Positions 6,616-42,670 of a stretch of DNA of 64,000 bases are shown here, piece by piece. Positions within the stretch are counted from its first letter, which is position 1, and each line of letters starts with the position of its first letter. Location: assembly GCF_036365525.1 (NCBI RefSeq), contig NC_090404.1, positions 12,180,550-12,244,549 on the forward strand, in the 5' to 3' direction. The stretch is from Heterodontus francisci (lineage: Eukaryota). The translations under genes were made by a program, and so were the position numbers. The notes under the pieces were generated by a model. It saw only the letters and a program-made list of their open reading frames with translations, did no database searches and had not been told where the DNA came from.

Positions 6616-6632
6616 CTGCCATTCTTTCACAG

Positions 6633-6929
6633 CGACACCGTCTCCCCCAACCCTTTACGGCCTGTGCTCCTGTGAGCAACCCAACACCGACGGCTCCTTG
6701 GCCTACGGCTGTTTGGCAATGGACTACATCCCCCAAATCACCAGCGTTTCCTGGAAGAAAGATAATGAGCCGATCACCACTGGATTGAAGACTTACCCGT
6801 CAGTGCTGAACAAGAAGGGAACCTACACCCAGAGCAGCCAGTTAACCATCACCGAGTCAGAGGTGGGAAGCAGCAAAATCTACTGCGAGGTTCGACGTGG
6901 AGAGTCAGTCTGGATCAAGGAAATTCCAG
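6633..6929 (+). CDS. IGHM: IgM heavy-chain constant exon CH1
   Basis: ttcacAG acceptor at 6631-6632; [32 protein letters not shown]; G|GTTAG donor; C1-set Cys/Trp pattern, no stops. Confidence 0.97.
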
Positions 6930-7140
6930 GTTAGTGTTGTGGAAACTGTGAAAAATATAAAAGCTTTAATGATCTTATTTAGAGCTTTGGCTCGACCATA
7001 TTCAGAGTACCGTGCACAGTTCTGATCCCTCTAAACTCCAGCTGGTGTCTGCTTGACAGCAAAGAAGCTGTTAAAATATAAGAACAGTTTGCATTAGTTA
7101 TTAATTTCTTCTAAAAATGTCTAACGTGTTTTTCTTGAAG

Positions 7141-7458
7141 ATTGTAAAGGTGACAAGGTCCATCCAACTGTTATCCTCACCCAGAGTTCCAGTGAAGAAA
7201 TCACAAGCAGAAGATTTGCAACTGTCTTGTGTTCAATCATCGATTTCCATCCAGAGTCAATAACCGTGAGTTGGTTGAAGGATGGACAACACATGGAATC
7301 GGGCTTCGTCACATCTCCCACCTGTGGAGTGAACGGGACCTTCTCGGCGACCAGTCGGCTGACAGTCCCCGCTAGGGAATGGTTCACCAACAAGGTCTAT
7401 ACCTGCCAGGTCTCCCATCAAGGGGTCACCCAAAGCCGAAACATCACCGGATCTCAGG
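7141..7458 (+). CDS. IGHM: IgM heavy-chain constant exon CH2
   Basis: ttgaAG acceptor; [42 protein letters not shown]; G|GTAAG donor; phase 1 at both ends. Confidence 0.97.
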
Positions 7459-8849
7459 GTAAGAGACTTAAACCAAAGAAGCTCCAGATCATTCTGTGCT
7501 CTGTTGTTAATCAAATAAAGGAATTTATAGGAACTCGTACAAAACACAGAATATTTTCTAATTTCCCATCATGCAGTTTGTATATTTCTTTCCGCTGTGA
7601 GTGCTGAATTAGGATTGCTCACGGTTCAACATGTCATCACATCACATCAATAGTCCCCTCTGCCTAGATGCCATATAGTGAGTGAGGTGACCTTGATATC
7701 AGGTTTATTCTGAGCGGCATTAAGTAATGAGGACAGGTTTATCAGACCTAACTGGTATTGCTTTCAGTATTAAAGATGAAAAGGGAATCTAACTGAGGTG
7801 TTTTAGTTGTTTATTGGAATTGATGGAGTCGATGGAGAAAAACATTTCTTCGGGTGTGGGACTCCAGAACAAGTGGGTACAACCTACAAATTTGACCAAG
7901 ATCATATAGGGATGATATCAGGAAGGAGCTATTCACACAATGGGTAGCGCAAACCTAGAATTATCTCCCTCAACTCACTCTTGAAGTCTGGCATCAATTG
8001 AAACATTTAGTGTTGATATTGATAGATTGAAATTAGGCAAGGGAATAAGGGTAGACGGTGTTAAGATACAGATCAGCCATTGTCTAACTGAATGGTGGAA
8101 CAGGCTCGAGGGGATGAATGGACTACTCTTTTTCTTCTGTTTTTATGATTGTCCTCTGGTCAGATCGCCCTCTGACTCCAGTCGGACATATGAGGAGTTC
8201 TCACTAATGACAGATAGTTGCAAAGTGCCTCAGACCGTTATTGCAATTTATTCTCCACATCAAAAAGACTCCTGAGAATATTTTCACCACCTTTCACCCC
8301 TCCTGCGATTGGTTCCAACATATTCTCAACTCCTCAACTATCGTGACAAGGCGCCAGAAAATTAACTTTTTTTTCCTGTTGGGCCAAAATTTCGGAATTT
8401 CGTTTGACACTCGTTTTGAGCCAGTGTGAATTACATGTCTAGCTTGTGTCCATGGGAGATAGAGCCATTATATTCAGCGGAGATACGAACATACTAATTA
8501 GGAGCAGGATTTGGTCACTCGGCCTCTCGAGCCGGCTCTGCCAGAGATTTCAGGAAGAACGTTATTCAGTGCGTAACACAAATTCTCCCACAATTATTCG
8601 TTTTTTACACCGCGTACTTGCTTCAAAGTCCATTACAGGCTTCTTAGGGTGCAAGTACACAGTATATGTTATAGGATCTCCAGGAAGCTCTTTCAGGTTG
8701 TTGTCCTTCCAATAAACTATAATATTTTGAGCAACAGCTGGAGGTTGATGTCTCGAAATTGATTTAATCTCCTAGAGACAGTGAAGGCTGAAAACTGGTG
8801 CCTGATTTTGAAGATGAATCTTTGTTTGACTTTCATTTCTGTTTTACAG

Positions 8850-9158
8850 TTCCTTGCTCCTGCAATGATCCAGTAATTAAACCACTGCCACCATCAATAG
8901 AACAGGTCTTACTGGAGGCGACGGTGACCTTAACTTGCGTCGTGTCTAATGCGCCTTATGGAGTCAATGTGTCCTGGACCCAAGAACAGAAGTCTTTGAA
9001 ATCAGAGATTGCCGTCCAACCCGGAGAGGATGCAGACAGCGTGATCAGCACCGTAAACATCTCGACGCAAGCCTGGCTGAGTGGGGCTGAGTTCTACTGC
9101 GTGGTGAGTCATCAGGATCTGCCGACTCCTCTCAGAGCATCCATCCAAAAGGAAGAAG
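8850..9158 (+). CDS. IGHM: IgM heavy-chain constant exon CH3
   Basis: ttacAG acceptor; [45 protein letters not shown]; G|GTGAG donor. Confidence 0.97.
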
Positions 9159-9659
9159 GTGAGCGGTGAGATTGAAGCAATAAGTGAGAGGTTGTGATCA
9201 TTTCTTGCGTTTGTGCAAGGCCCAATTCGTCCTATTAAGTGCTCACATGGATTATTCTGATAGTTTAAGTGTAATTCCACTGAAATAATACCCTCTGGAA
9301 CCATAGGTAATGCATTTAAGGGGAAGCGAGATAAGTAGATGAGGGAGAAAGGAATAGAAGGAGATGAAGTAAGGCGGGAGGAGGTTTGTGTGCAGAGTAA
9401 GCAACAACACAGACTAGTTGGGCCGAATGACCAGTTTCTCTGCTGTAAATTCTATGTAATGTTCCAGTCTAATCCTTTAAATTCTCAGAGAGAAGGATTG
9501 CATCCACCTCTGCTCCTGGCTGGAAAACAGGACAGAGCCCAGAGGGGAAAAGGAAACCTTTAAAATTCAGCGCAAAGCACATTCCTCTAACATGTAACCA
9601 CCGGTTTTATTGTCTCTGGAATTCTCCAGTTTATTGACATTATTTTAATTTTTCTGTAG

Positions 9660-10051
9660 TTAAAGATCTGCGAGAACCGTCCGTGTCTATCCTCCTGTCC
9701 CCGGCAGAAGATGTCTCCGCTCAGAGGTTCCTCTCCCTCACCTGCTTAGTGAGAGGTTTCTTCCCACGAGAGATCTTCGTCAAGTGGACCGTCAATGACA
9801 AGTCGGTGAATCCTGGCAACTACAAGAACACCGAGGTGATGGCAGAGAACGACAATAGCTCCTACTTCATCTACAGCCTGTTATCCATTGCAGCGGAGGA
9901 GTGGGCCAGCGGCGCTTCTTACTCCTGTGTGGTGGGACATGAAGCGATCCCCTTGAAGATCATCAACAGAACAGTTAATAAATCGAGCGGTAAACCCAGT
10001 TTTGTGAACATTTCCCTTGCACTGTTGGACACTGTCAATTCATGTCAATGA
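9660..10051 (+). CDS. IGHM: IgM constant exon CH4 plus secretory tailpiece (internal donor after 9989 for the membrane form)
   Basis: ctgtAG acceptor; [41 protein letters not shown]|[19 protein letters not shown]; tailpiece has an N-glycan site and penultimate Cys; G|GTAAA donor at 9989/9990. Confidence 0.97.
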
Positions 10052-24529: not shown

Positions 24530-26925
24530 ACATACGAATTAAGAGCAAAAGTAGGCCATTCGGCCCTTCTCACCTGCTCCACGTTTCAATAAGATCATGG
24601 CTGATCTGTTTGTGTCTCGAATTCCACAATCCCATCTACCCCTGATGACCTTTGATTCCTTGCCTAACAAGAATCTAGCTACCTGTGCCTTAAAAATATT
24701 CAATGACCCCGCCTCCACTTCCTTCTGAGGTAGAGAGTCCCAAAGTCGCACAACTCTCTGAGAGAAAGAAACCCTCCTCATCTCTGTCCTAAAAGGGCAA
24801 CCCCTAATTTTAAAACAGTGCCCACCAGTTCTGGACTCACCCCACAAAAAGAAACATCCTTTCCACATCTACCTTGTCAAGACCGTTCAGGATCTTATAT
24901 ACTTCGATTAAGTCTCCCCTTATTCTTCTAAACTCCAGTGAGAACAAGCCCAGTCTGACCAACCTTTCTTTGTAAGACAACCCGTTCATTCCAGGTATCA
25001 GTCGAGTAAACTTCCTCTGAACCACCTCCAACACATTTGCATCCTTCCTCAAATAAGGAGACCAAAGCTGCACACTTTATTCCAGACGTGTTCTCACCAA
25101 TGGCCTGTATAACTGAAGCATAATATCCTTAATTTTATTTTCAGTTCCTGTCGTAATAAAGTATAGCAATCCATTAGACTTCTTTTTTACTGTACCTGCA
25201 TACGAACCTTTTGTGCCTCATGCAGTAGAATACCTAGATCGCTCTGCACCCCGACATTCTGCAGTCGTTCTCCGTTTAAGTAATACTCTGCTTTTTTATT
25301 CTTCTTGCTAAAATGAACAACTTCACATTTTCACACATCTACGAGATTTTTGCCCACTCACTTAACCTATCTATATCGGTCTGCAACTCCCCTATGTCCT
25401 CTTTACAACATACTTTCCTACCTATCATTGTGTCATCTGCAAATTTAACTACCATGCCATTGCTCCCCTCATCTAAGTCATTGATATTAACTGTAAAAAG
25501 TTGAGGCTCCAGCACAGACCCCTGTGGGGCTCCACTCGTCACATCCTGCCAATCAGAAAATGACCCATTATTGCATACTGTCTGTTTCCTTCCAGCCAGC
25601 CAATCTTCTATCCATGCTAATATGTTATCCCCGGACACCATGAGCTCCTACTCTGCGCAATAACTTTTTATGTGGCACCTTGTCAAATGTTTCTGCAAAT
25701 CAAGTACAGCACGTCAACGGACTTCCCTTTATCCACAGCGCAGGTTACTCCTTCAAAGTTTTCCAATAAATTGTTTAAACGTGATTTCCTATTCACAAAA
25801 CCATGCTGACTATTCCCGATTACCTTGAGTTTTTCTAGCTCGAGCCGACTTGATGATCGATTCCAATACCTTCCCCACGACAGACGTCAAGCGAACTGCC
25901 CTATTTTCTGACCTGATTTCTGCCTCGACCACCCACCACCAACACAGCAGCTGAATAGAGGGGTAATATTTGCTACTTTCCAGTCTGATAGAAACTTTCC
26001 AGAATATAGCAAATTGTGAAAAATTAACACCAACGCATCTACTACCTCATTAGCCACCTCTTTTAAGACCCTAGGATGCAACCCATCAGGACGCAGGAAA
26101 TTGTTAGCCCGCAGATCCATCAGTCTGCTCACTACCGGTTCCCTGGTGATTGCAATTTCACCAATTTCCTCTCTTGCTTCCACCTCCTGATTTTCAGCTA
26201 TTACTGGAATGGTTTCTGTATCCTCTATAGTGATGACAGAAACGAAATATTTGTTCATTTCATCCGCCATTTCCTTATTATCTACTATGAGCTCCCCATT
26301 CTCTCTCCCTAGAGGACCAACCCGCACTATACTTACTCTTTTCCTTTTTAAAATACACGTCGAAACTCTTGCTATCCGTTTTTACATTTCTAAGTAGCTT
26401 CCTCTCCTATTCTAATTTATTTCTCCTTATTAACCATTTAGTCATTCTCTGCCGTTCTTCATATTCTGACCAATAATCTGACCTGACACTTATCTTTGCG
26501 CATATAAATTTATTTCCTTAAGTTTGATGCTTTCGTCAACTTCGTTGGTTTACCACCGACAGTGGATCCTCCCCTTAGAATATTTCTTGACAGTAAGGAT
26601 ATACTTATCCTGAGCATTCTGAAATATCGCCTTAAACTTCTGCCATTTTTGAACTATTAACCAATCTGTTAACCTAGTAACCCAGTTCACTTCAGCTAGC
26701 TCAGCTTTCATGCCCACATAGTTGCCCTTTTCCAGTTTAGAATACTCGTCTTAGACCTGCTCTTCTCTCATTCAAACTGGATGTAACATTCAATGATATT
26801 GTGATCGCTACTACCTAGAGGTGCCTTTACTCTGAGGTCATTAATTAATCCGGTCACTTTACACAATACCAAGTCTAGTAAAACCTGCTCTCTGGTTGAT
26901 TCCAGAACTTGCTGCTCTAAGAAAG
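24530..26925 (-). mobile_element. Degenerate CR1 LINE ORF2 (RT region and 3' end)
   Basis: Minus-strand ORFs with GAPQGSVL, KFADDT, QLWSPYLRKD, PDGLHPRVLKE; CR1 3' tail near 24530. Confidence 0.9.
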
Positions 26926-27896
26926 TATCGGCTGTCTCCACTCTTTACTCACAATTGAAAATGTTTTCTTCTTCCGGTCTTTAGGTAAAAGGTTCAAAAC
27001 CTTTGTGTCTGCATGGTATATAAATTCAGGACCACTCCCAATCGATCTTTCCGGAAACAGGAGCTGTCAGATCAGGACAATGTCGAAACACAGAATTTCC
27101 CACACCCTGATCACGGGTATCTGAACCTTTCTCCCTCTCGCCACCAGAGGTCGTGAGATAACAATGTTCATTTTATGGATCTGTCGCCGGGCAGCGAAGT
27201 GAGTTAAGTTTATATTAAACTTATATATATTCAAAAATATACTCCAAAACCTGAGTATAATTTGGAATATATAGACGTTCAATAGCTGATATCAACTTCT
27301 CAGAGTAATCATTACAAAGAAGCATCTACATATCGAAGGATTACTTCTGAACAGTGTGGGTGGAAGATCGTGAAAGAATATTAAACTGTGAACGTCAGAC
27401 ACACCCTGAAATCTGAGTTCTGAATCATTAACTGTATCGTTACTGAAGGTCGATGTTAAATGAATGAAAGACAAATCGAAACCACCTGTATTTTGTTTAT
27501 TTTCCTTCTCCACTCCTTTTGCCATTCTGAGTGGAATTTGTAACAGCAGTTTTTCATGTCCTGCTGATGTTGAGTATTCTGTTTTAGTGAGAACCCACCC
27601 TACATTCCGAAGGCTTCGAACCCACACCTGGCGCTCTGCTCCCACCCACTTTCAGCCAAACAGCAACACATTGCTACAAAGCACTGATGTCTGTTCAGTA
27701 GTTTGTTCAGTAACAGCAGATATCATCGTTCTAATGTGATGGATCTATAAATCACTCCGATAAAATACCTGATCAATGTTAATTCACAAGTTAATTGATC
27801 GGTGAGGGAAATCTCACTGGATTCACGGTTACCTTGGTGCTGATGGTGAAGATACTGGAATTTGAGAGGAAGAATTAACGCCAGTATAAACCAAAT

Positions 27897-28151
27897 CCAG
27901 TAACAATCTCATGTTTCTGGTTACAATAACCAGACAAGGGATTTTGTCCCCGCCCCACGACTCTAATAGCGGAACCATTCCCCATATGAGGACAGTGACT
28001 GTAGCCCAGCTCGGGGTGTTTCCATTCACTGACAGCCAGCTCACCACCTACCGCTCTCACAGCACCACTGGGGACACAAGGAAGTGAGGTGAGAGAATCC
28101 TGAGACACGACAGCAGATTATTGAGGGTGGGGATTAGAACGGGTGTCTTCA
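27897..28151 (+). repeat. Left arm of ~255-bp inverted repeat (= upstream/promoter region of the intact TCR V)
   Basis: Reverse complement aligns to 28918-29171, including a 46-bp identical core; Ets site GGAAGT at ~28080. Confidence 0.9.
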
Positions 28152-28188
28152 AATATCCAACTCCCCTTTTACAGAGCGGACAGCGACA

Positions 28189-28234
28189 ATGCGGCTACTC
28201 AGCATCTGGGTTGTGTGGGGAGCATTTCTGACAG
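28189..28234 (+). CDS. Leader exon of intact TCR alpha/delta V
   Basis: MRLLSIWVVWGAFLT + G|GTAATT donor. Confidence 0.9.
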
Positions 28235-28347
28235 GTAATTGTGGACAAAGCACATTTCATCTTTTCTCTCGTTTCACAAACATGGTTTGAACCTGAATTT
28301 TCAACAACCGTCGGTCTGATCTTTTCCTGTTTAAACTTGTTTTTCAG

Positions 28348-28654
28348 ATTTAAGTCATGGAGATTCTGTCACTCAGCCGCGGTCCCCAGATGTTAAGACA
28401 GAAGGAGAAGCGGTGATTTTAAGCTGTACCTATGATACGACACGGAGCGAGTATTCTTTATACTGGTACCAGCAACACCCAGATACACAGCCCGAGTTTA
28501 TACTGAGGAAGGATTCTGATAATTATGAAGATAAAGCAGATTTTGCTAAAAATCGTTTCTCTGCTGAGCTCCACACCGTGACTAAATTCACCAGTTTAAC
28601 CATCTCAGGGCTGCAGCTGACTGACTCTGCCATGTATTACTGCGCCTTCAGACT
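28348..28654 (+). CDS. Intact T-cell receptor alpha/delta-type V exon
   Basis: tttcAG acceptor; DLSHGDSVTQPRSPDVKTEGEAVILSCTYDTTRSEYSLYWYQQHPDTQPEFILRKDSDNYEDKADFAKNRFSAELHTVTKFTSLTISGLQLTDSAMYYCAFR; Cys23, Trp41 (WYQQ), DSAMYYC; open frame. Confidence 0.92.
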
Positions 28655-28693
28655 CACAGTGATGGAAAGCAGTCTCACCCCTGTACAAAAACT
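28655..28693 (+). other. Near-consensus 23-RSS of intact TCR V
   Basis: CACAGTG(28655-28661)-23 bp-ACAAAAACT(28685-28693). Confidence 0.95.
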
Positions 28694-28917
28694 GCCTTTG
28701 GAGTGTGGGTGGGAGCTCCGGTCTGTTGGGGTGTGTGTAGAATCGCAGGCAGATGTGCAGCGACAATGTGCCGCGCGCAGTCAGGCACTCAAACACACAC
28801 CGAGAGGAAACCAAATTAACCTCGGATCAAACTGTCACCCAACTGTTTCCAGGAACGGCCGAGAAATCAAACTACAGAATCCAATCAGACAGACAGATCC
28901 AGCACAGAAAACATATG

Positions 28918-29171
28918 TGAGGACCCCAGTTCTAATCCCCAGCCTCAATAATCTGCTGTCATGTCTCAGGATGCTCTCATCTCACTTCCTTGTGTCTCCA
29001 GTGGTGCTGTGCGACCAGCCGGTCGTCAGCTGGCTGTCAGTGAATGGAAACACCCCGAGCTGGGCTACAGTCAGAGTTCTGATAGGGAAATGGCTGCACT
29101 TTTAGAGACCGGGGGTGGGAATGAAACCCTGGCCTGTTAATTATCACCAACCTGCTCAGGATTGTTAATGG
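28918..29171 (-). repeat. Right arm of inverted repeat (antisense copy of the V upstream region, 225 bp past the RSS)
   Basis: gttctaatcccca.cctcaataatctgctgtc.tgtctcagga..ctcacttccttgtgtc..agctggctgtcagtgaatggaaacaccccgagctgggctacagtca; the ORF track shows VSWLSVNGNTPSWATV on both strands. Confidence 0.9.
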
Positions 29172-29444
29172 CGACAGAAAATATTCCATCATTAAGGAGA
29201 CACCCTGAAGCACAATGGACATTAGAGGAACTCTGTGTTTTGCGCTTGTTTTAAACATCACAGACACTACCTTGTGAAATCTATTCATTGTGTACGAACT
29301 GTCTCTGAGTCAGCAACACGCTCTGATCAAAAAAACCCTGTGAACAGGCGGCGGTCAAAGACTCTGAGAAACTGATATCCCAATTAATTATTTATTCTCA
29401 GGAAACAGCTAATTAAAAAAAAAAAGCAACCAGTTAACCCCTGA

Positions 29445-31120
29445 ATTGTGAGTGCATGTGTGTGAAAGGGCGAGTTCGGTTAAAATAAGAAGTGATAATT
29501 GTTTTTAGACATAGGTGTATCTCAATAGTGTTTAAGATTTAGTTGAAATAAATAGTTAATTTGTTGTTGTCTAAAGATACCGGCTTTGGTCTATTTTATT
29601 CTGGGGGTTACTAAAGTGTTCACTTTGGGTGTTTTCCGGTTTGGTAGAAAAACCTTAATAATATGCTGCAATCTGTGTAGTGATGGGACTGAACTGACAG
29701 TGCATTACTCCCGCCTCGGTCGTAATATATTAATTTGGTATCTCGTGTAGGATCAGATTAATTGGGGGTTCGCATTTGGAATTATATTAGTTGCTCATAT
29801 CTGGGATAACATATAAATTGGGGTCTTGCGTCTGGCATCATATTAATTGCTATCGCATCTGGGGCCATATGAATTGGAAACTCATTTGCTGGGATACAAA
29901 CCTAATGCCAATTACGAAAACATAGCAGGAACCAGGGTTCTTGTGTAATAAGGTACAGTCTATGACATCAGAATGGCATTAGCAGTTGCAGCAGTTTTTC
30001 TGGGAAAGGACAACGTGTCCCTCAATGTCTTCACAATTTTACCTAAGAATAAACGAAAAGAACTGGCTGAAAAATTGGGATTAGAATTGAAATCAGGTGG
30101 CAAACAAAGCAGTAATAATTGACCTAATAGCCCAACATCTAAAATTAGAAAACGAAGAAGAGGAAGAAGATAGTAAGCCAGAGAATAATGCAGTGGAATT
30201 GGCGAAGATTCAGTTAGAAATCAAAAAACTGGAACTTGAACATGAAAAAGAAAAAGTCAAAGCAAAAAGTAAACTTGAGGCTGAAAAAGAATTGTAGAAA
30301 ATTGAACTTGAAAAAGAGCAAAGAGGGAAAGAAAGGGAATTTAGGTTAAAAGAGGTGGAACTAAGACAAAGGGGTGGTCTTGACTCCAGGGAAAATTCAG
30401 CTCTGGAAGAAGCTGAATTCAGCGCAGAGCACAAGGAAAAGCTCTTTACATTTATACAAGCTCTTCCTAAGTTTGAGGAAAGGGACGTAGAGGCATTTTT
30501 CATATCTTTTGAAAAAATAACCAAACTGATGGAATGGAAATAGGAAAACTGGAGACTGCTGATGCAAAGCAGGCTGATGGGCAGAGCTCTTGACGTTGAG
30601 GCCACGCTTCCTGAAAAGCCTACTGCAGATTATCAGATGGCAAAAAAGGCCATTCTCGCTGTTTATGAGTTAGTCTCTGAAGCTTACCGTCAGACGTTTC
30701 GGAACTTACGAAGATTGACTGGGCAGATGTATGTAGAATTTAAGAGAGTGAAGCAAAGTAATTTTGACCATTGGATACGAGCATTAAAGATGGAAACCAC
30801 AGATGAGAACCTTCGAGAATGGATTCTCTTGGAAAAGTTTAAAAACTGTATTCCTTCAGTAGTGAGAACTGATGTAGCTCAGATGAAAGTTTTGAAAGCT
30901 AGGCAAGCAGTGGAAGTTAATGATTTTGAGCTTGTGAATAAGCCAAAACCTTTTGTCCATCACCCCCATAAACACGAGAAGGATAGAAGGTGGGAGAGTG
31001 AAAGGAAGGCAAGTAGCCGGGGACAAGAAGGAACAGCTGTGAATGCCCCAGGATCACCTCCTCAGGCCCGAAAGGAATGTTCTGAGGGTAGAAGTGAGGT
31101 TTACATGCTGAAGTGGTATC
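29445..31120 (+). mobile_element. Ty3/gypsy (Gmr1-like) LTR retrotransposon remnant: LTR end and disrupted gag
   Basis: gag from ~29973 with coiled coil, LPKFEERDVEAFFISFEK, DYQMAKKAILAVYELVSEAYRQTFRN, ILLEKFKNCIP (SCAN-like capsid); stops and frameshifts; truncated by CR1. Confidence 0.8.
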
Positions 31121-34100
31121 AAGAACAAAGAACAAAGAACAAAGATAATTACAGCACAGGAACAGGCCCTTCGGCCCTCCAAGCCTGCGCCGATCCAGAT
31201 CCTCTCTCTAAACATGTCGCCTATTTTCTAACGTTCTGTATCTCTTTTCTTCCTGCCCATTCATGTATCTGTCTAGATATATCTTAAAAGACTCCATCGT
31301 GCCCGCATCCACCACCTCCGCTGGCAACGCGTTCCAGGCACCCACCACCCTCTGCGTAAAGAACTTTCCACGCATATCCCCCTAAACTTTTCCCCTTTCA
31401 CTTTGAACTCGTGTCCTCTAGTAATTGAATCCCCCACTCTGGGAAAAAGCCTCTTGCTATCCACCCTGTCTATACCTCTCATGATTTTGTACACCTCAAT
31501 CAGGTCCCCCCTCAACCTCCGTCTTTCTAATGAAAATAATCCTAATCTACTCAACCTCTCTTCATAGCTAGCACCCTCCATACCAGGCAACATCCTGGTG
31601 AACCTCCTCTGCACCCTCTCCAAAGCATGCACATCCTTTTGATAATGTGGCGACCAGAACTGTACGCAGTATTCCAAATGTGGCCGAACCAAAGTCCTAT
31701 ACAACTGTAACATGACCTGCCAACTCTTGTACTCAATACCCCGTCCGATGAAGGAAAGCATGCCGTATGCCTTCTTGACCACTCTATTTACCTGCGTTGC
31801 CACCTTCAGGGAACAGTGGACCTGAACACCCAAATCTCTCTGTACATCAATTTTCCCCAGGACTTTTCCATTTACTGTATAGTTCACTCTTGAATTGGAT
31901 CTTCCAAAATGCATCACCTCGCATTTGCCCTGATTGAACTCCATCTGCCATTTCTCTGCCCAACTCTCCAATCTATCTATATTCTGCTGTATTCTCTGAC
32001 AGTCCCCTTCACTATCTGCTACTCCACCAATCTTAGTGTCATCTGCAAACTTGCTAATCAGTCCACCTATACTTTCCTCCAAATCATTAATGTATATCAC
32101 AAACAACAGTGGTCCCAGCACGGATCCCTGTGGAACACCACTGGTCACACGTCTCCATTTTGAGAAACTTCCTTCTACTGCTACTCTGTGTCTCCTGTTG
32201 CCCAGCCAGTTCTTTATCCATCTAGCTAGTACACCTTGGACCCCAAGCGCCTTCACTTTCTCCATCAGCCTGCCATGGGGAACCTTATCAAACGCCTTAC
32301 TGAAGTCCATGTATATGACATCGACAGCCCTTCCCTCATCAATCAACTTTGTCACTTCCTCAAAGAATTCTATTAAGTTGGTAAGACATGACCTTCCCTG
32401 CACAAAACCATGTTGCCTATCACTGATAAGCCCATTTTCTTCCAAATGGGAATAGATCCTATCCCTCAGTATCTTCTCCAGCAGCTTCCCTACCACTGAC
32501 GTCAGGCTCACACGTCTATAATTACCTGGATTATCCCTGCTACCCTTCTTAAACAAGGGGACAACATTAGCAATTCTCCAGTCCTCCGGGACCTCACCCG
32601 TGTTTAAGGATGCTGCAAAGATATCTGTTAAGGCCCCAGCTATTTCCTCTCTCGCTTCCCTCAGTAACCTGGGATAGATCCCATACGGACCTGGGGACTT
32701 GTCCACCTTAATGCCCTTTAGAATACCCAACACTTCCTCCCTCCTTATGCCGACCTGACCTAAAGTAATCAAACATCTGTTCCTAACCTCAACATCCGTC
32801 ATGTCCCTCTCCTCGGTGAATACCGATGCGAAGTACTCGTTTAGAATCTCACCCATTTTCTCTGACTCCAAGCATAACATTCCTCCTTTGTCCTTTAGTG
32901 GGCCAATCCTTTCTCTGGTTACCCTCTTTCTCCTTATATATGAATAAAAGGCTTTGGGATTTTCTTTAACCCTGTTTGCTAAAGATATTTCATGACCCCT
33001 TTTAGCCCTCTTAATTCCTCATTTCAGATTGGTCCTACATTCCCGATATTCTTTCAAAGCTTCGTCTTTCATCAGCCACCTAGACATTATGTATGCTTCC
33101 TTTTTCCTCTTAGCTAGTCTCACAATTTCACCTGTCATCCATGGTTCCCTAATCTTGCCATTTCTATCCCTCATTTTCACAGGAACATGTCTCTCCTGCA
33201 CGCTAATCAACCTCTCTTTAAAAGCCTCCCACATATCACATGTGGATTTTCCTTCAAACAGCTGCTCCCAATCTACATTCCCCAGCTCCTGCCGAATTTT
33301 GGTATAGTTGGCCTTCCCCCAATTTAGCACTCTTCCTTTAGGACCACTCTCGTCTTTGTCCATGAGTATTTTAAAGCTTACGGAATTGTGATCACTATTC
33401 CCAAAGTGGTCCCCTACTGAAACTTCAGCCACCTGGCCGGGCTCATTCCCCAACACCAGGTCCAGTATGGCCCCTTCCCGAGTTGGACTATTTACATACT
33501 GCTCTAGAAAACCCTCCTGGGTGCTCCTTACAAATTCTGCTCCATCCAGACCTCTAACACTAAGTGAATCCCAGTCAATGTTGGGAAAATTAAAATCTCC
33601 TATCACCACCACCCTGTTGCTCCTACATCTTTCCATAATCTGTTTACATATTTATACCTCTATCTCACGCTCGCTGTTGGGAGGCCTGCAGTACAGCCCC
33701 AACATTGTTACCGCACCCTTCCTATTTCTGAGTTCTGTCCATATTGCCTCACTGCTCGAGTCCTCCATAGTGCCCTCCTTCAGCACAGCTGTGATATCCT
33801 CTTTGACCAGTAATGCAACTCCTCCACCCCTTTTACCTCCCTCTCTATCCCGCCTGAAGCATCGATATCCTGGGATATTTAGTTGCCAATCATGCCCTTC
33901 CCTCAACCAAGTCACAGTAATAGCAATAACATCATACTCCCAGGTACTAATCCAAGCCCTATGTTCATCTGCCTTACCTACTACACTTCTTGCATTAAAA
34001 CAAATGCACCTCAGACCACCAGTCCCTTTATATTCATCATCTGCTCCCTGCCTGCTCTTCCCCTTAGTCACACTGACTTGATTATCTAGTTCCTTACAGG

Positions 34101-34590: not shown

Positions 34591-36620
34591 ACAGGGTCTA
34601 GTGTAATATAAACAGGGTCCGGGTCTAATGTAATATAAACAGAGACATGGTCTAGTGTAATATGAACAGGGACAGAGGCTAGAGCAATATAAACAGAGAC
34701 AGGGTCTAGTGTAATATAAACAGAGACTGGGTCTAGTATAATATAAACAGAGACAGAGGCTGGAGCAATATAAACAGAGACAGGGTCCAGTGTAATATAA
34801 ACAGAGACAGAGGCTAGAGCAATATAAACAGAGACAGGGTCCAGTGTAATATAAACAGAGACAGGGTCTGGTGTAATATAAACAGAGACAGGGTCTAGTG
34901 TAATATAAACAGGGTCCAGGTCTAATGTAATATAAACAGAGACATGGTCTAGTGTAATATAAACAGGGACAGAGGCTAGAGCAATGTAAACAGAGACAGG
35001 GTCTAGTGTAATATAAACAGAGACTGGGTCTAGTGTAATATAAACAGGGACAGAGGCTAGAGCAATATAAACAGAGACAGGGTCCAGTGTATTATAAACA
35101 GAGACAGGGTCTGGTGTAATATAAACAGAGACAGGGTCTAGTGTAATATAAACAGGGGCCGGGTCTAATGTAATATAAACAGAGACAGGGTCTAGTGTAA
35201 TATAAACAGGGACAGAGGCTAGAGCAATATAAACAGAGACAGGGTCTAGTGTAATATAAACAGGGACGGGTCTAGTGTAATATAAACAGAGACAGGGTCT
35301 AGTGTAATATAAACAGAGACAGGGTCTAGTGTAATATAAACAGGGACAGAGGCTAGAGCAATATAAACAGAGACATGGTATAGTGTAATATAAACAGAGA
35401 CAGAGGCTAGAGCAATATAAACAGAGACAGGGTCTAGTGTAATATAAACAGAGACAGGGTCCAATGTAATATAAACAGAGACAGAGGCGAGAGCAATATA
35501 AACAGAGACATGGTCTAGTGTAATATAAACAGAGACTGGGTCGAGTGTAATATAAACAGAGACAGGGTCCAGTGTAATATAAGCAGAGACAGGGTCTGGT
35601 GTAATATAAACAGAGACTGGGTCTAGTGTAATATAAACAGGGGCCGGGTCTCGTGTAATATAAACAGAGACAGGGTCTAGTGTAATATAAACAGAGACAG
35701 AGGCTAGAGCAATATAAACAGAGACAGGGTCCAGTGTAATATAAACAGAGACAGAGGCTAGAGCAATATAAACAGAGACAGGGTCCAGTGTAATATAAAC
35801 AGAGACAGGGTCTGGTGTAATATAAACAGAGACAGGGTCTAGTGTAATATAAACAGGGTCCGGGTCTAATGTAATATGAACAGAGACATGGTCTAGTGTA
35901 ATATAAACAGGGACAGAGGCTAGAGCAATATAAACAGAGACAGGGGCTAGTGTAATATAAACAGAGACTGGGTCTAGTGTAATATAAATAGAGACAGAGG
36001 CTAGAGCAATATAAACAGAGACAGGGTCCAGTGTAATATAAACAGAGACAGAGGCTAGAGCAATATAAACAGAGACAGGGTCCAGTGTAATATAAACAGA
36101 GACAGGGTCTGGTGTAATATAAACAGAGACTGGGTCTAGTGTAATATAAACAGGGACAGAGGCTAGAGTAATGTAAACAGAGACAGGGTCTAGTGTAATA
36201 TAAACAGAGACTGGGTCTAGTGTAATATAAACAGAGACAGAGGCTAGAGCAATATAAACAGAGACAGGGTCCAGTGTAATATAAACAGAGACAGGGTCTG
36301 GTGTAATATAAACAGAGACAGGGTCTAGTGTAATATAAACAGGGGCCGGGTCTAATGTAATATAAACAGAGACAGGGTCTAGTGTAATATAAGCAGGGAC
36401 AGAGGCTAGAGCAATATAAACAGAGACAGGGTCCAGTGTAATATAAACAGAGACAAGGTCAAGTGTAATATAAACAGGGACAGATGCTAGAGCAATATAA
36501 ACAGAGACAGGGTCCAGTGTAATATAAACAGAGACAGGGTCCAGTGTAATATAAACAGAGACAGGGTTTAGTGTAATATAAACAGGGGCCAGGTCTAGTG
36601 CAAAAGAAACAGAGACAGAG
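34591..36620. repeat. 27-bp minisatellite array (~75 units), homogeneous
   Basis: Unit acagggtctagtgtaatataaacagag with variant acagaggctagagcaatataaacagag. Confidence 0.97.
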
Positions 36621-37187: not shown

Positions 37188-37226
37188 AGTTATTGTACGA
37201 GGCTGTAGCTCGTTCCCATCACTGAG
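37188..37226 (-). other. Defective 23-RSS of TCR V pseudogene
   Basis: Minus strand CTCAGTG (CAC broken)-23 bp-ACAATAACT. Confidence 0.85.
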
Positions 37227-38256
37227 AGACTCAGTGCACAGTAACAGACCGCGGTGTCAGACGGCCGCAGCTCCGAGATGGTCAATCGGTACAACTTGTC
37301 TGAATGCTGGACTGTATCAGAAAATTGGTTGTGAGCGAAATCCGCCTCAAATTCAGCGTGGCTCTTGTCCCTCCAGACTGAAAACTCGGGCTGTCTGCCT
37401 GGGTGTTGTTGGTACCAGAATAAGTAATAACCATCGTCGATACAGATGCAGGTTAAAGTGACATCTTCTCCCTCTGTCTGTGTGAGCGAGGACTCCCGCT
37501 GACTGACAGAATCTCCATCTCTCAGATCTGGAACACATGGTTAAAGAAAGGGGAAATCACCGATTAAAAGTTCAAAATAGACCGAACTGACGGTGAAAAT
37601 TCTGTCAGTGTTTCATAAATTTAAATAGAATTTAAAGCACAGGTCATTCGGCCCAACTGGTCCATGCCAGGGTTCCCACTCCCCACGAGCATGCTCCACC
37701 CCTCTTCATCTCACTCTAATAGCATATCCTTCCACCCCTTTCTCTCTCATCTGTTTATCTAGCTTCCCCTTAAATGCATCTCTGCTATTCACCATTCTCT
37801 GGATGAAGAAGTTTGAATTCCCGAGTGGATCTTTTGGCGATTCTAATATTTATGACCCATTGTTTTGGTATCCTCTTCAAGTGGAAACATCTTCTCCAGT
37901 TCTACCTATTGAATACCTTGATAATTTTAAAGACATCAATCAGGTTGCCCTCAGTCTTCTCTTTACGAGAGGAAAGAGCCTCAGCTGGTACAATGTTTTC
38001 TGATAGCTATTATTTCTCAATTCTGGCATCATCCTTGTAAATCGTTTTTTGCATTTTTTCCCTACATCCTTGTTGTCATATGGCGACCAGAGCTGCTCAC
38101 AATACTCCAATTGTGGTCTGACCAAGTTCGACACAATTTCCCATGAACTCTGTTTTTTCAAATTTATTTCTGTCGAAATTAATCCCTTTTTAAAGTTTGG
38201 AATTTCTTACCGATAACAAATGTCACCCAGAGCCCAGCGAGAAGAGGGAGCCGTAT
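37227..38256 (-). pseudogene. TCR alpha/delta-type V pseudogene (leader 38256-38211 with ATG>ATA; V exon 37527-37227 open; CR1 fragment in intron)
   Basis: Leader IRLPLLAGLWVTFVI+G|GTAAG; exon DLRDGDSVSQRESSLTQTEGEDVTLTCICIDDGYYLFWYQQHPGRQPEFSVWRDKSHAEFEADFAHNQFSDTVQHSDKLYRLTISELRPSDTAVCYCALS. Absent from the ORF track. Confidence 0.88.
37625..38160 (-). mobile_element. CR1 3' fragment inserted in the leader intron of the V pseudogene
   Basis: LVRPQLEYCEQLWSPY on minus strand plus CR1-type tail. Confidence 0.8.
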
Positions 38257-38405: not shown

Positions 38406-38768
38406 TTAACCACAAGTCCTTGTTTATTTTAGAGAACTGAGAAAGTAAATTCGCATTCTGCTCATCAGAGAGAAAGATTAATAAACGTGAACAGATGGAT
38501 CTCTAGTTGACCAGAGACAGAATGATCTCGAATTGATCTGAGAGGAGCTTGATGTTTAGTTGATCTGAGAGACAGTTTGATCTCCAATTGATCAGAAAGA
38601 AAGTTTTGTCTTTGCTTGACCTGAGGGAAGCCCTGTCAAGAAACAAAGACTGGTGTTGAATGCAGATAAAGATGTTCAGTTTATTTCACTATCACTAATC
38701 AGACCTATCTGGTTGACGGGTTCGGGTTTGTTTACTCCTCTGCTGAAGACACACAAGGGGAAGATTTC

Positions 38769-40800
38769 AAAGAACAAAGAACAAAGAACAGTACAGCACA
38801 GGAACAGGCCATTCGGCCCTCCAAGCCTGCGCCAATCTTGATGCCTGCCTAAACTAACACCATCTGCACTTCCGGGGCCCATATCCCTCTATTCCCTTCC
38901 TATTCATATATTTGTCAAGATGTCTCTTAAACTATCGTATCTGCTTCCACCACCTCCCCTGGCAGCAAGTTCCAGGCACTCACCACCCTCTGTGTAAAAA
39001 ACTTGCCTCGCACATCCCCTCTAAACTTTGCCCCTCGCACCTTAAACCTATGTCCCCTAGTAACTGACTCCTCCACCCTGGGAAAAAGCTTCTGACTATC
39101 CACTCTGTCCATGCCACTCATAACTTTGTAAACCTCTATAATGTCGCCCCTCCACCTCTGTCGTTCCAGTGAAAACAATCCGAGTTTATCCAACCTCTCC
39201 TCATAGCTAATGCCCTCCAGACCAGGCAACACCCTGATAAATCTCCTCTGCACCCTCTCCAAAGCCTCCACGTCCTTCTGGGAGTGTGGCGACCAGAATT
39301 GCACGCAATATTCTAAGTGTGGCCTAACTAAGGTTCTGTACAGCTGCAACATGACTTGCCAATTTTTATACTCTATGCCCCGACCGATGAACGCAAGCAT
39401 GCCGTATGCCTTCTTGACTACTTTATCCACCTGCGTTGCCATTTTCAGTGACCTGTGGACCTGTATGCCCAGATCTCTCTGCCTGTCAATTCTCCTAAGG
39501 GTTCTGCCATTTACTGTATACCTTCCACCTGCATTAGACCTTCCAAAATGCATTACCTCACATTTGTCCGGATTAAACTCCATCTGCCATTTCTCCGCCC
39601 AAGTCTCCAACCGATCTATGTCCTGCTGTATCCTCTGACAATCCTCATCATTATCCGCAGCTCCACCAACCTTTGTGTCATCCGCAAACCTACTAATCAG
39701 ACCAGCTACATTTTCCTCCAAATCATTTATATATATTACAAAGAGTAAAGGTCCCAGCGTTGATCCCTGCGGAACACCACTAGTCACATCCCTCCATTCA
39801 GAAAATCACCCATCTACTGTTACCCTCTGTCTTTTGTGACTGAGCCAGTTCTGTATCCATCTTGCCAGCTCACCTCTGATCCCGTGTGACTTCACCTTTT
39901 GCACCGGTCTGCCATGCGGGACCTTGTCAAAGGCTTTACTAAAGTCCATATGGACAACATCCACCTCATCAATCATCTTCGTCACTTCCTCAAAAAACGC
40001 AATTAAATTAGTAAGACACGACCTCCCCTTCACAAAACCATGCTGTCTCCCGCTAATAAGTTCGTTTGTTTCCAAATGGGAGTAAATCCTGTCCCGAAGA
40101 ATCCTCTCTAATAGTTTCCCGACCACTGACGTAAGGCTCACCGGCATATAATTTCCTGAATTATCCTTACCACCCTTCTTAAACAAAGGAACAACATTGG
40201 CTATTCTCCAGTCCTCTGGGACCTCACCTATAGCCAATGAGGATGCAAAGATTTCTGTCAAGGCCCCAGAAATTTCTTCCCTTGCCTCCTTCAGTATTCT
40301 GGGGTAGATCCCATCAGGCCCTGGGGACTTATCTACCTTAATAATATAAAAGCAAAGTACTGCGGATGCTGGAAATCTGAAACAAAAACAAGAAATGCTG
40401 GATTCACTCAGCAGGTCTGGCAGCATCTGTGGAAAGAGAAGCAGAGTTAACGTTTCGGGTCAGTGACCCTTCTTCGGAACTCAAGAAGGGTCACTGACCC
40501 GAAACGTTAACTCTGCTTCTCTTTCCACAGATGCTGCCAGACCTGCTGAGTGACTTATCTACCTGAATGCTTTGCAAGACACCCAACACCTCCTCCTTTT
40601 TGATAATGAGATGACTAAGACTATCTGCACTCCCTTCCCTAGGCTCATCATCCACCAAGTCCTTCTCCTTGGTGAATACGGATGCAAAGTACTCATTTAG
40701 CACCTCACCCATTTCCTCTGGCTCCACGCATAGCTTCCCATCTCTGTCCTTGACTGGGCCAACCCTTTCCCTGGTTACCCTGTTGCTCTTTATATATGTA
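38769..40800 (-). mobile_element. CR1 LINE (RT and 3' end), interrupted by a hairpin insertion
   Basis: ORFs 38927-39787 and 39806-40426 (GVPQGSTLGP, FADDT, DFSKAFDKVPH); (ttctttg)n tail. Confidence 0.93.
40339..40551. mobile_element. Penelope pLTR-derived inverted (hairpin) insertion with 13-bp target duplication
   Basis: Arms 40404-40474 and 40483-40553 are reverse complements; GACTTATCTACCT at 40326-40338 and 40552-40564. Confidence 0.85.
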
Positions 40801-41088
40801 TATTTCCTCTGGTGTCTCTGTGATCGTGACATATCAAACAGAACGGGAAAATGCATGGGCAGTGAACTGGAGAAACTTGCAATTTAACCCCCATTACCCG
40901 CTATGTTGGCCTGGTTTTCGCCTGTCGATTCCTCATTATAGAGTGAATGAAATCTGAAATCTGACTCCTCTATTCAGAGCTGATGGGAGCTGCCTTGCGG
41001 GAACATTCTGTCTGGAGAATAACCTACCTGTTCAGTGTCTCACAGAGCGGGCAGCCACACACTGTTCAAGTTACACACAGTGTGCTGA

Positions 41089-41127
41089 AGTATTTGTGCA
41101 GGGTGCACACGGAACTGTGTAGCTGTG
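41089..41127 (-). other. 23-RSS of TCR V pseudogene
   Basis: Minus strand CACAGCT(41127-41121)-23 bp-ACAAATACT(41097-41089). Confidence 0.88.
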
Positions 41128-41572
41128 TGTCTCAGGGCACAGTAATATACGGCGCTGTCTGACAGCTCCGCCGCAGAAACAGTCAGCGGAACCGTACTCT
41201 CTCCTGTGCTCAACTCTGCTGTAAAACGGTCCTTGGCGAAGTGGACTGGAAAGGTGTCATATTGGGTTATAAGCAACACGTTTACCGGAGCCCGACCGGG
41301 AAGCTGCCAGTACCAGAAAAGATAAGGGTTTGTACTTGTTGTTTCAAAACTTCAATTCAGCATCACCACTCCTTCTTCCCGCACTGTCTTGGTCGAATAG
41401 CCCTGATGAACCGAATCACCGCCAACGCTGCCGGCTGAAAGAGAAATTAAACATGAACAACTAACCGCCTCAATAACCAGACCTGTTAGTGTTTATTTAT
41501 ACACAGATTCTACATGTACTTACACAGCACAGAGAGGGCCCAAACCAGGCTGGAATAAATAAGGAAACACAT
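41128..41572 (-). pseudogene. TCR alpha/delta-type V with a single nonsense codon at conserved Cys23 (leader 41572-41524, V exon 41434-41128)
   Basis: MCFLIYSSLVWALSVL|SGSVGGDSVHQGYSTKTVREEGVVMLN*SFETTSTNPYLFWYWQLPGRAPVNVLLITQYDTFPVHFAKDRFTAELSTGESTVPLTVSAAELSDSAVYYCALR; TGA at 41354-41352; GT/AG sites intact. Confidence 0.92.
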
Positions 41573-42670
41573 CACTGTCCGCTTGTCGAATGAGAGCAGC
41601 GACACTTTCTCTCCAGTGGCAAAAACTGCCACCCACACCGGAGCAGGCTGATCTATTTTACCCTGTGACAGGGATAGAAAGGAAACTGACTCTGCAGTCA
41701 TGTCATATCCGTTATTGACAATGTCACATCATCAGGGAACAGGAAGAATTGTTGCGGTCGCTGTTTGTGCAGCAACATCAGAAATGTTTCATTGAAGAGT
41801 CCTCTGGACAGTATTTCCAGCGAAATTGTAAACTTTGTTTTTACTTGTTCAACCATTTAATCACAAAGAATGTATTTAAGGTCAGCTGAGAGAGAGGTCA
41901 GAGGAAACCATCGCGGAACTATTTACGATTCACTGTATTCAATGAACAGGGCAATTATCCCACTCAGTTCGTTATTCAGTTCATTTGCATGTACCTGTGG
42001 TATTTTACATGGACAGTACGGAGCTGCCATTAGCGTTAACGGGGGACAGGATATGATTTTAATCACTGAACACAACCGAGAGTCGGTGGAAAATCGTTCC
42101 AGAGCCACAATTGGCCAGAGACTGAATGATGCCAGTTTTCCTGGGTCGATGGCGCCCCCTAGTCTCTCTTTAATTCCCCATTTCATAGAATCCTGCGGCA
42201 ATGGAGGAGGCCATTCGGTCCATCGTGTACGTGCTGGCATTTGATTATTGCCACTGCTGTGCTCTTCCCCCATAGGCCTGTAAATTTATCCTTTTCAAGT
42301 ATATATTTAATTAATTTCTGGGAATTCCTATTTGGACAGGAAGGGCGTGAACTGCACAAGAATTGTGATAATGGAGTGAGTTTAGTCCTCGGGAATTGCT
42401 CGGTGTTCGGAATGCGTGTGCGCCCATCTGTGTGGTGGTCTATCTCAATTATATACACTGTGTGTGTACATGTGTGTGTGCGCAGTTAAACAGGATATAG
42501 TTATTTTAATAAATGAATAATTGACAGAAAGATGGAGACTGTAAAGTATTAAGCTTATAATATTGGAAGATGGTTGCAAACAATGACCGGCTGAAGGTTT
42601 TCCTGGTAACCTCACCTCACGTGGGCTGTTTAATGTCGAGCGAACATTCCCGCCTCGGTTATGTTGTGAA

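What the first reader, a model, noticed from the sequence alone, without database searches (positions are those of the whole stretch)
27897..29171. The only intact TCR V is enclosed by ~255-bp inverted copies of its own promoter region: invertible cassette or antisense promoter
Seen: 27897-28151 (ending 38 bp before the ATG) recurs inverted at 28918-29171, 225 bp past the RSS, with a 46-bp identical core and the GGAAGTGAG Ets element kept in both. The 766 bp between the arms is essentially leader + intron + V + RSS. No TSD was found, and no second leader follows the right arm. Inference: recombination between the arms would flip the V while leaving it a promoter, switching it to the orientation that can invert into the IgM D segments. 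Alternatively the right arm drives antisense transcription across the RSS and V (RAG accessibility, convergent transcription for AID; sharks hypermutate TCR V). A relic of an inverted duplication is the plain explanation.
Basis: partly seen in the sequence, partly recalled or inferred. Interest (0 to 1): 0.8.

Follow-up and report, generated by a model that had tools for sequence, protein, structure and literature searches.

The report
Backward promoter copy behind shark V gene
A shark T-cell-receptor V gene really is bracketed by a 260-base backward copy of its own upstream region, but this is an old, diverged feature inherited with the whole V gene family, and nothing shows that it flips the gene or acts as a second promoter.

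Summary
27897-28156 recurs inverted at 28913-29171: 81% identity over 261 columns, a 46-bp exact block, GGAAGTGAG in both arms, and only two copies in the window. Between the arms lies an intact TCR V-alpha/delta segment: leader, spliced intron, V exon, 23-RSS and 219 bp of 3' flank.

The arm is not a dispersed transposon. Its abundance in public runs tracks the V subfamily, and it has no target-site duplication. Contigs from two related species join arm-like sequence, inverted, to V-downstream sequence. This scan already noted the same layout 3.25 Mb away in this genome (s1-872206, s1-874029). So the inverted repeat belongs to an old duplication unit.

The arms are two-tiered: the inner 161 columns are 90% identical and the outer 100 are 67%. 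That fits the right arm being the orphan promoter of a lost, oppositely oriented sister V, or gene conversion of the core.

- **Flipping by homologous recombination:** improbable at this divergence, and no inverted joints were listed in same-species contigs.
- **Transcription:** RNA contigs show low-level transcription running across and beyond the right arm. That argues against initiation there, but the strand is unknown.

Verdict: a real, family-wide relic.

The parts
27897..28156 (+). Left arm: 5' flank (promoter region / distal 5'UTR) of the V gene, ending 33 nt before the ATG
   Evidence: paralog and other-species contigs align from about 27962-27986 onward
27996..28156 (+). Conserved core of the left arm (90% identical to the right-arm core); holds the 46-bp exact block 27996-28041 and the Ets-like GGAAGTGAG at 28080-28088
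28157..28188 (+). Proximal 5'UTR not included in the repeat; holds GCGGACAG[CT]GA, also found before the ATG of pseudogene V3
28189..28234 (+). Leader exon (MRLLSIWVVWGAFLT + 1 nt), GT donor at 28235
   Evidence: a spliced RNA contig joint 28234->28353 in run X5
28235..28347 (+). Leader intron (GT..AG)
   Evidence: spliced joint
28348..28654 (+). V exon, TCR V-alpha/delta type (…LSCTY…LYWYQQ…DSAMYYCAFR), open
   Evidence: Pfam V-set 8.9e-16; best single-domain PDB matches are TCR alpha and delta chains; 62-67% identical to Chiloscyllium punctatum V proteins
28655..28693 (+). 23-RSS: CACAGTG, 23-nt spacer, ACAAAAACT
   Evidence: read
28694..28912 (+). 3' flank between the RSS and the right arm; conserved in V-family paralogs to about 28845-28900
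   Evidence: contig pieces; no homology to leader or V on the minus strand
28913..29171 (-). Right arm: inverted copy of 27897-28156, without the last 33 nt of 5'UTR, leader or V behind it
   Evidence: outer edge bridged by RNA contig 29103-29477
28913..29073 (-). Conserved core of the right arm (90% identical to 27996-28156), Ets-like GGAAGTGAG at 28989-28981

Best explanation
The inverted repeat is an old structural relic that travels with a TCR V-alpha/delta subfamily. Each duplication unit is [5' flank/promoter] - leader - intron - V - 23-RSS - about 210-220 bp - [backward copy of the 5' flank]. The most likely origin is a tail-to-tail pair of sister V genes, from which the second V (leader, V, RSS) was deleted, leaving its promoter as an orphan. 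A fold-back duplication is the alternative origin. The unit was then copied many times. The left arm is the working upstream region of the V. The right arm has no demonstrated job: it is passively transcribed by low-level RNA that runs through the whole unit. It does not flip the V, because the arms are too diverged for homologous recombination. Shown: the repeat, its anatomy, its V-linked moderate copy number, RNA over it, and splicing of the leader intron. Inferred: the origin, the age, and the absence of present function.
For: Repeat and anatomy. Not a dispersed transposon: there are only two copies in 64 kb. In DNA contigs of the same species, summed depth over the arms (225-326) is like that over the V exon (236-423). 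It is about 5-10 times the single-copy flank 26970-27585 (32-59). It is far below the true transposons at 26200-26969 and 29434-30800 (5,000-83,000) (depth from contigs is rough). Family-wide and old: other-species contigs (organisms B, C) align from about 27968-27986 to about 28845-28900. They also show joints '28154 -> 28835 opposite strands' (B and C) and '28151 -> 28645 opposite strands' (B), which is arm-like sequence abutting inverted V-downstream sequence. In B and C the arm-core bin has about twice the depth of the V bins, as expected for two arms per unit. Scan notes s1-872206 and s1-874029 report the same layout in paralogs 3.25 Mb away, with the copy 216 bp past the RSS. Two-tier divergence is 90% core vs 67% outer, Fisher p 7e-6. 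It mirrors where paralog homology starts, so the right arm looks like 'another paralog's promoter'. Tail-to-tail Vs exist in this window (V1 plus strand, V2 and V3 minus strand). Against flipping: the longest identical run is 46 bp and overall identity is 81%. RNA: run X5 is RNA (spliced joint 28234->28353). It has about 0 depth on single-copy 26970-27585. It does hold a 99% contig at 29103-29477 and reference-allele letters at 28747-28772, so the RNA passes through the arm.
Against: The right-arm core (10% diverged from the left) is no more diverged than paralog non-coding DNA (about 11-17% contig pieces), although the repeat must predate the paralogs. That hints at constraint or gene conversion of the right-arm core. 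The layout seems retained across many copies and at least three species. RNA is present over the right arm and its strand is unknown, so an antisense start cannot be excluded. No paralog sequence could be fetched (look-up of encoding contigs closed), so the origin model is untested. The cross-species inference rests on joint tables and contig depths, which the tool itself warns are poor measures.
Confidence: 0.6

Rival explanations
1. The right arm is a working V-associated cis-regulatory element. It would be an antisense or bidirectional promoter, or an enhancer-like factor-binding platform, placed just 3' of the RSS. It would open chromatin for RAG or give convergent transcription that favours AID action on shark TCR V genes.
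For: The core of 161 bp is kept at 90%, with the Ets-like GGAAGTGAG intact in both arms, while the outer part has decayed to 67%. The layout is kept in paralogs and probably in related species. RNA is present past the RSS and over the arm, while a nearby single-copy stretch is silent. Mouse VH8 genes carry a conserved downstream enhancer (V8E) that works with antisense-transcribed PAIR elements (PMC10390877). Shark TCR alpha undergoes AID-type hypermutation (PMC5931798).
Against: RNA also covers 29103-29477, upstream of any antisense start in the arm, so it runs through and does not start there. The right arm lacks the 33 nt next to the ATG, including the motif shared with V3. RNA depth there (about 25-47) is tiny beside the V exon (about 1,600). 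Core conservation is equally explained by past selection on a lost sister V or by gene conversion. No CTCF motif is present. Motif matches are weak evidence.
Confidence: 0.2
2. Invertible cassette: homologous recombination between the arms flips leader-V-RSS. Each orientation keeps a promoter, and the V switches between deletional and inversional joining, for example into the neighbouring IgM D segments.
For: The geometry is right: flipping would recreate promoter-leader-V locally. Vs of both orientations occur in the window. An IgM cluster lies upstream on the plus strand (Cmu exons 6542-10048; V-D-D-J per note s1-874032). The sharp identity step at 27996 could be a gene-conversion tract.
Against: Arms are 81% identical and the longest perfect match is 46 bp. 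From my own knowledge, not checked here: intrachromosomal recombination in vertebrate cells needs roughly 130-230 bp or more of uninterrupted identity (Waldman and Liskay) and drops steeply with about 10-20% mismatch. No 'opposite strands' joint was listed for the same-species DNA run X1 (contigs drop rare forms and 193 joints were not shown, so this is weak). No RSS-like or recombinase-type site lies at the arm edges (read). V2 and V3 have no such arms.
Confidence: 0.04
3. The arms are the terminal inverted repeats, or two opposed copies, of a mobile element (MITE or foldback type) that captured or landed around the V gene.
For: Long inverted arms enclose a short unit. Several different joints cluster at the inner arm edge (28151-28178) in other species. 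Very abundant transposons lie on both sides, at 26200-26969 and 29434-30800.
Against: There is no target-site duplication. The outer termini are the least conserved part (67%), the opposite of transposon termini. Copy number tracks the V family, not a dispersed repeat. No further copy lies in 64 kb rich in transposons. No tRNA, SINE or other Rfam match was found.
Confidence: 0.05
4. The repeat acts through structure. When both arms are in one germline transcript they would form a 160-260 bp double-stranded RNA stem (or a DNA cruciform) looping out leader-V-RSS. That would affect RNA fate, editing or RAG access.
For: The predicted duplex is very stable: core -283 kcal/mol against -75 +/- 7 for shuffles. 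Low-level RNA contigs cover the arm region of a paralog up to at least 225 nt before the ATG, and also cover the right arm.
Against: Any diverged inverted repeat gives such an energy. There is no evidence that one molecule holds both arms. Compensatory change could not be tested without paralog sequences.
Confidence: 0.05

Closest known systems
Mouse Igh PAIR elements and the VH8 downstream element V8E (PMC10390877)
   Same: Non-coding modules repeated together with one V gene family, lying right beside or downstream of the V. In the mouse they are linked with antisense transcription and local activation of V recombination.
   Different: PAIR and V8E are not inverted copies of the V promoter, and their activity (Pax5, CTCF, E2A binding, enhancer assays) is proven. 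Here no CTCF motif was found, the strand of the RNA is unknown and no function is shown. This is resemblance of position only, with no sequence relation.
Inverted segmental duplications and oppositely oriented V genes in antigen-receptor loci (inverted Vs after C-beta and C-delta, mentioned in PMC12227049; the large inverted V-kappa duplication, from my own knowledge)
   Same: V genes and their flanks duplicated in inverted orientation by ordinary genome rearrangement. Both orientations coexist in one locus, as with V1 against V2 and V3 here.
   Different: Those involve whole V genes or large blocks. Here only about 260 bp of 5' flank survives, 219 bp behind the RSS, and the stub is propagated with every unit.
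Same layout elsewhere in this genome (scan notes s1-872206, s1-874029)
   Same: A V gene followed, 216 bases past its RSS, by a backward copy of its own 5' region, in two paralogs 3.25 Mb upstream. Here the distance is 219-225 bp.
   Different: This is a third or fourth copy at a new address beside an IgM cluster. Those notes are AI notes and their sequences could not be compared here.
Inversion polymorphisms driven by inverted repeats through homologous recombination, and bacterial invertible promoter switches
   Same: A unit enclosed by inverted repeats.
   Different: Those need near-identical arms or a dedicated recombinase and site. Here the arms are 81% identical, there is no recombinase site, and no second orientation was seen.

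Membership tests
TCR V-alpha/delta gene segment | Ig V-set domain with conserved Cys, Trp and YYC | tested here: met
   Pfam V-set 8.9e-16; the translation has LSC…WYQQ…YYCAFR; best single-domain PDB matches are TCR alpha and delta chains, E about 1e-18
TCR V-alpha/delta gene segment | Split leader with a spliced intron | tested here: met
   ATG at 28189, GT at 28235, AG at 28347; an RNA contig joint 28234->28353 in family transcripts. The joined leader+V protein was not searched
TCR V-alpha/delta gene segment | 23-RSS directly after the V exon | tested here: met
   CACAGTG, 23 nt, ACAAAAACT at 28655-28693
V gene promoter (left arm) | Lies directly upstream of the leader and is conserved among family members | tested here: met
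   The arm ends 33 nt before the ATG; paralog and other-species contigs align at 80% or more from about 27962-27986
V gene promoter (left arm) | Mapped transcription start and factor binding | not testable with these tools
   Only contigs were available. RNA depth rises in bin 28048-28201, but contigs cannot show starts
Antisense or second promoter (right arm) | Transcripts that begin in the arm, on the minus strand | tested here: inconclusive
   RNA covers 28720-28772 and 29103-29477. Coverage on the far side of the arm argues for read-through, but strand and ends are unknown
Invertible DNA cassette (homologous-recombination type) | Long, near-identical inverted arms | tested here: not met
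   81% over 261 columns, longest exact run 46 bp
Invertible DNA cassette (homologous-recombination type) | Both orientations present in DNA | tested here: inconclusive
   No opposite-strand joint was listed for same-species run X1, but contigs drop rare forms and most joints were not shown. Opposite-strand joints in species B and C are what the unflipped right-arm junction would give
Transposon with terminal inverted repeats (MITE or foldback) | Target-site duplication and well-kept termini | tested here: not met
   No direct repeat at the outer edges; the outer 100 columns are the least conserved, at 67%
Transposon with terminal inverted repeats (MITE or foldback) | Dispersed, high copy number independent of V genes | tested here: not met
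   Two copies in the window. Depth is like the V exon and 100-fold or more below the flanking transposons (rough)
PAIR / V8E-like V-associated regulatory module | CTCF, Pax5 or E2A binding sites and enhancer activity | tested here: not met
   No CTCF consensus (2 mismatches or fewer) anywhere in 27800-29300. Other factors and enhancer activity are not testable here
PAIR / V8E-like V-associated regulatory module | Repeated together with one V family | tested here: met
   (multi-copy with the V; joints in B and C); scan notes s1-872206 and s1-874029

The most novel reading that the evidence does not exclude
A backward copy of the V promoter core, kept about 220 bp behind the RSS in every unit of a shark TCR V-alpha/delta subfamily and across species, is a selected cis-element. 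It would drive or receive convergent transcription over V and RSS, or pair with the upstream arm as RNA or DNA. That would tune RAG access or AID-type hypermutation of shark TCR V genes.
Probability: 0.15. Interest if true: 0.7.

Novelty: new member of a known kind. Interest (0 to 1): 0.3.

Why it matters
If the backward promoter copy were functional, it would be a compact, sequence-defined handle on two questions: how V segments are made accessible, and how shark T-cell receptors come to be hypermutated. It would also be a simple natural analogue of the mouse PAIR/V8E modules. As it stands, it is a useful annotation fact. This V subfamily carries a diagnostic inverted stub behind the RSS, which marks the duplication unit and helps trace how the V array grew.

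Tried and rejected
- **Arm shared with the other Vs' upstream DNA:** Smith-Waterman scores were at shuffle level.
- **Same kind of repeat around V2 or V3:** none found.
- **CTCF pair in the arms:** no motif.
- **Structured RNA or SINE in 26000-31000:** no Rfam match at E<=1.
- **RSS-like signal at the inner edge of the right arm:** I read a 7/9 nonamer-like GTTTTCTGT, but no heptamer at 12 or 23 nt, so this was rejected.
- **Remnant of a second leader or V behind the right arm:** none.
- **Joined leader+V protein:** I dropped the joined step and searched the V exon alone by reference.
- **The search of earlier findings by sequence:** blank.
- **Literature:** a search for inverted repeats around V segments found nothing on point. 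The Sci Adv 2025 paper on the IgH-TCR alpha/delta linkage does not mention promoters or such repeats.
- **Transcription-factor motifs:** only the Ets-like site and an ACCACT are shared by both arms. I treat this as weak evidence.
- **N run at 50867-51026:** left alone.

Full report
**Observation**

- The repeat finder reports arms 27982-28156 and 28913-29087: 175 nt, 88% complementary, 756 nt apart.
- blastn extends this to 27918-28156 vs 29149-28913, 83% over 239 nt, E 4e-67, and finds no third copy in the 64-kb window.
- A gapped local alignment runs from 27897/29171 to 28156/28913, 261 columns, 81% identical. It has a 46-bp exact block (27996-28041 = 29073-29028) and GGAAGTGAG in both arms.
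- No homology continues outward or inward from the arms.
- I see no target-site duplication at the outer edges.
- Arms that differ by 19% cannot be an assembly fold-back artefact. An independent RNA contig, 99% identical over 29103-29477, bridges the outer edge of the right arm.

**What is enclosed**

The unit is laid out as follows.
- 33 nt of 5'UTR.
- A leader exon at 28189-28234 (MRLLSIWVVWGAFLT).
- A GT..AG intron at 28235-28347.
- An open V exon at 28348-28654 (…AVILSCTY…LYWYQQHPDTQPEF…DSAMYYCAFR).
- A canonical 23-RSS at 28655-28693 (CACAGTG, 23 nt, ACAAAAACT).
- 219 nt of 3' flank.

The exon is a V-set domain (Pfam 8.9e-16). Its best single-domain matches among solved structures are TCR alpha and delta chains. 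Its nearest database proteins are bamboo-shark V proteins at 62-67% identity. A spliced RNA contig joint (28234->28353) shows that the leader intron is used in transcripts of this V family.

**Context**

- IgM constant exons lie on the plus strand at 6542-10048 (C1-set domains).
- Two more TCR-type Vs lie on the minus strand at 37525-37223 and 41420-41124.
- The first of these has a spoiled heptamer (CTCAGTG) and no visible leader. The second has an in-frame stop. V1 is therefore the only intact V in the window.
- IgH clusters lying beside the elasmobranch TCR alpha/delta locus were published in 2025 (PMC12227049).
- Scan notes call the species a horn shark. I did not check that.

**Transposon or V-specific?**

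The arm has no relative elsewhere in this transposon-rich window. It has no Rfam, tRNA or SINE signature. It is not alignable with the upstream DNA of V2 or V3.

I laid public contigs on 26200-30800 at 80% likeness or more.
- True high-copy repeats lie at 26200-26969 and 29434-30800, with summed depth of 5,000-83,000 in the same-species DNA run X1.
- A single-copy stretch lies at 26970-27585 (32-59).
- The whole V unit, arms included, is at 225-423.

So the arm's abundance follows the V subfamily, not a dispersed repeat. The tool warns that contig depth is a poor measure, so I use only this order-of-magnitude contrast.

**A family-wide, old layout**

- Contigs of two other species (organisms B and C) align from about 27968-27986 to about 28845-28900. 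This runs from the start of the arm core to just before the right arm. Some contigs carry unaligned sequence beyond these points.
- Those species also show joints '28154 -> 28835, opposite strands' (B and C) and '28151 -> 28645, opposite strands' (B). This is arm-like sequence ending at the same inner edge and abutting inverted V-downstream sequence. An unflipped right-arm junction looks like this when its arm resembles our left arm more than our right arm.
- In B and C the arm-core bin has roughly twice the depth of the V bins (4145 vs 1675-2242; 900 vs 344-535), as expected for two arms per unit.
- Homologs of 28972-29433 also exist in B and C.
- Independently, the scan's own notes report the same architecture in paralogs 3.25 Mb upstream in this genome. 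There the backward copy lies 216 bases past the RSS, and the follow-up found no evidence of function (s1-872206, s1-874029). These are AI notes.

**Two-tier divergence**

The inner 161 columns are 90% identical and the outer 100 columns only 67%. The outer part is still more than 10 SD above shuffled and random controls. The step at 27996 is sharp (Fisher p 7e-6). A fresh fold-back copy of the V's own promoter should have decayed evenly.

The pattern matches where paralog homology begins (about 27962-27986). The right arm therefore relates to the left arm as any other family member's promoter would. The simplest history is this:
1. There were two sister Vs arranged tail to tail. That arrangement exists in this window between V1 and V2/V3.
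2. Their promoter cores were both under selection while their outer flanks drifted.
3. The second V was deleted up to 33 nt before its ATG.
4. The resulting unit was then duplicated.

Gene conversion of the core, or present constraint on the right-arm core, would give the same picture. The core's 10% divergence is no larger than the 11-17% seen between paralog contigs and this locus. That is a mild hint in favour of conversion or constraint, and I record it as unexplained.

**Invertible cassette**

Flipping between the arms would indeed recreate promoter-leader-V locally. The substrate is poor, however: 81% identity and at most 46 identical bases in a row. From my own knowledge (Waldman and Liskay, not checked here), intrachromosomal homologous recombination in vertebrate cells needs on the order of 130-230 bp of uninterrupted identity and falls steeply with 10-20% mismatch. 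No RSS-like or recombinase-type site lies at the arm edges. No opposite-strand joint was listed for the same-species DNA run, which is a weak test because contigs drop rare forms. I put this reading at about 4%.

**Antisense promoter**

Run X5 behaves as RNA: it has a spliced joint and about zero depth over the single-copy 26970-27585. It nevertheless holds reference-allele letters at 28747-28772, past the RSS. It also holds a 99% contig over 29103-29477, at depths of 15-24 against about 1,600 over the V exon.

So the DNA behind the RSS and across the right arm is transcribed at a low level. The coverage continues on the far side of the arm, upstream of any antisense start the arm could provide. 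The RNA therefore most simply runs through the arm. It could be read-through from the V promoter or from the abutting repeat at 29434. Contigs give no strand and no ends, so the question stays open.

The right arm also lacks the ATG-proximal 33 nt, including the motif GCGGACAG[CT]GA shared by V1 and V3. There is no CTCF motif in the arms. If one RNA held both arms they would pair very stably (-283 kcal/mol for the cores against -75 for shuffles), but any inverted repeat would do so.

**Comparison with known systems**

By position the closest analogy is the mouse PAIR/V8E modules. These are non-coding elements repeated with one VH family, beside or downstream of the V, with antisense transcription and proven enhancer activity on recombination (PMC10390877). 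Membership is not claimed: there is no sequence relation, no CTCF site and no activity data. Structurally this is an ordinary inverted micro-duplication carried along in a multigene family. A literature search found no description of V segments bracketed by inverted promoter copies, and the 2025 locus paper does not mention them.

**Verdict**

The exciting readings are not supported (flipping) or not testable here (antisense start). The plain reading is favoured, with two refinements: it is a family-wide, cross-species relic, and probably the orphan promoter of a lost sister V. The scan has met this structure before at other addresses in the same genome. Interest is modest (0.3). The best chance of something more is a conserved regulatory role for the right-arm core, at about 15-20%. 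An arm tree and stranded thymus RNA would settle that.

Noticed in passing
window 40404-40553: A perfect 71-nt palindrome (100% complementary arms, 8-nt loop), built of sequence that looks like a shark dispersed repeat. It lies about 570 nt from pseudogene V3. It could be a hairpin-forming repeat insertion or a fold-back artefact.
   Followed up: partly
window 34591-36618: A tandem array of a 27-nt unit (ACAGGGTCTAGTGTAATATAAACAGAG), about 75 copies, 84% matches, between V1 and V2.
   Followed up: no
window 29434-30357 and 26200-26969: The repeat starting 260 nt beyond the right arm is very abundant in the window's species but has zero depth in two related species, so it is a lineage-specific transposon burst. 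The repeat at 26200-26969 is very abundant in all three species.
   Followed up: partly
window 37223-37525 (minus) and 41124-41420 (minus): Two further TCR V-alpha/delta-type segments lie in the opposite orientation to V1. V2 has an open exon but heptamer CTCAGTG and no visible leader. V3 has an in-frame TGA. V1 and V2 lie tail to tail, 8.5 kb apart.
   Followed up: partly
window 28176-28186 and about 41577-41587 (minus): A short motif GCGGACAG[CT]GA sits just before the initiator ATG of both V1 and V3, although the rest of their upstream DNA is unalignable. It lies outside the repeated arm.
   Followed up: no
window 31126-32946 vs 38768-40802: A direct repeat of about 1.6-1.8 kb at 75-79% identity, with weaker matches to reverse-transcriptase-bearing repeats at 47-56 kb. 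These are probably two insertions of one retroelement family flanking the V1 and V2/V3 areas.
   Followed up: no
window 6542-10048: Four open IgM constant-domain exons (C1-set) lie on the plus strand, 18 kb upstream of V1. This is the IgM cluster within TCR V territory noted elsewhere in the scan and published for elasmobranchs in 2025.
   Followed up: partly
window 28151-28178 (other species' contigs): Related species show 'goes back' joints (28151->28099, 28178->28101). This points to 53-78 bp tandem duplications at the arm/5'UTR border in their copies of this V family.
   Followed up: no
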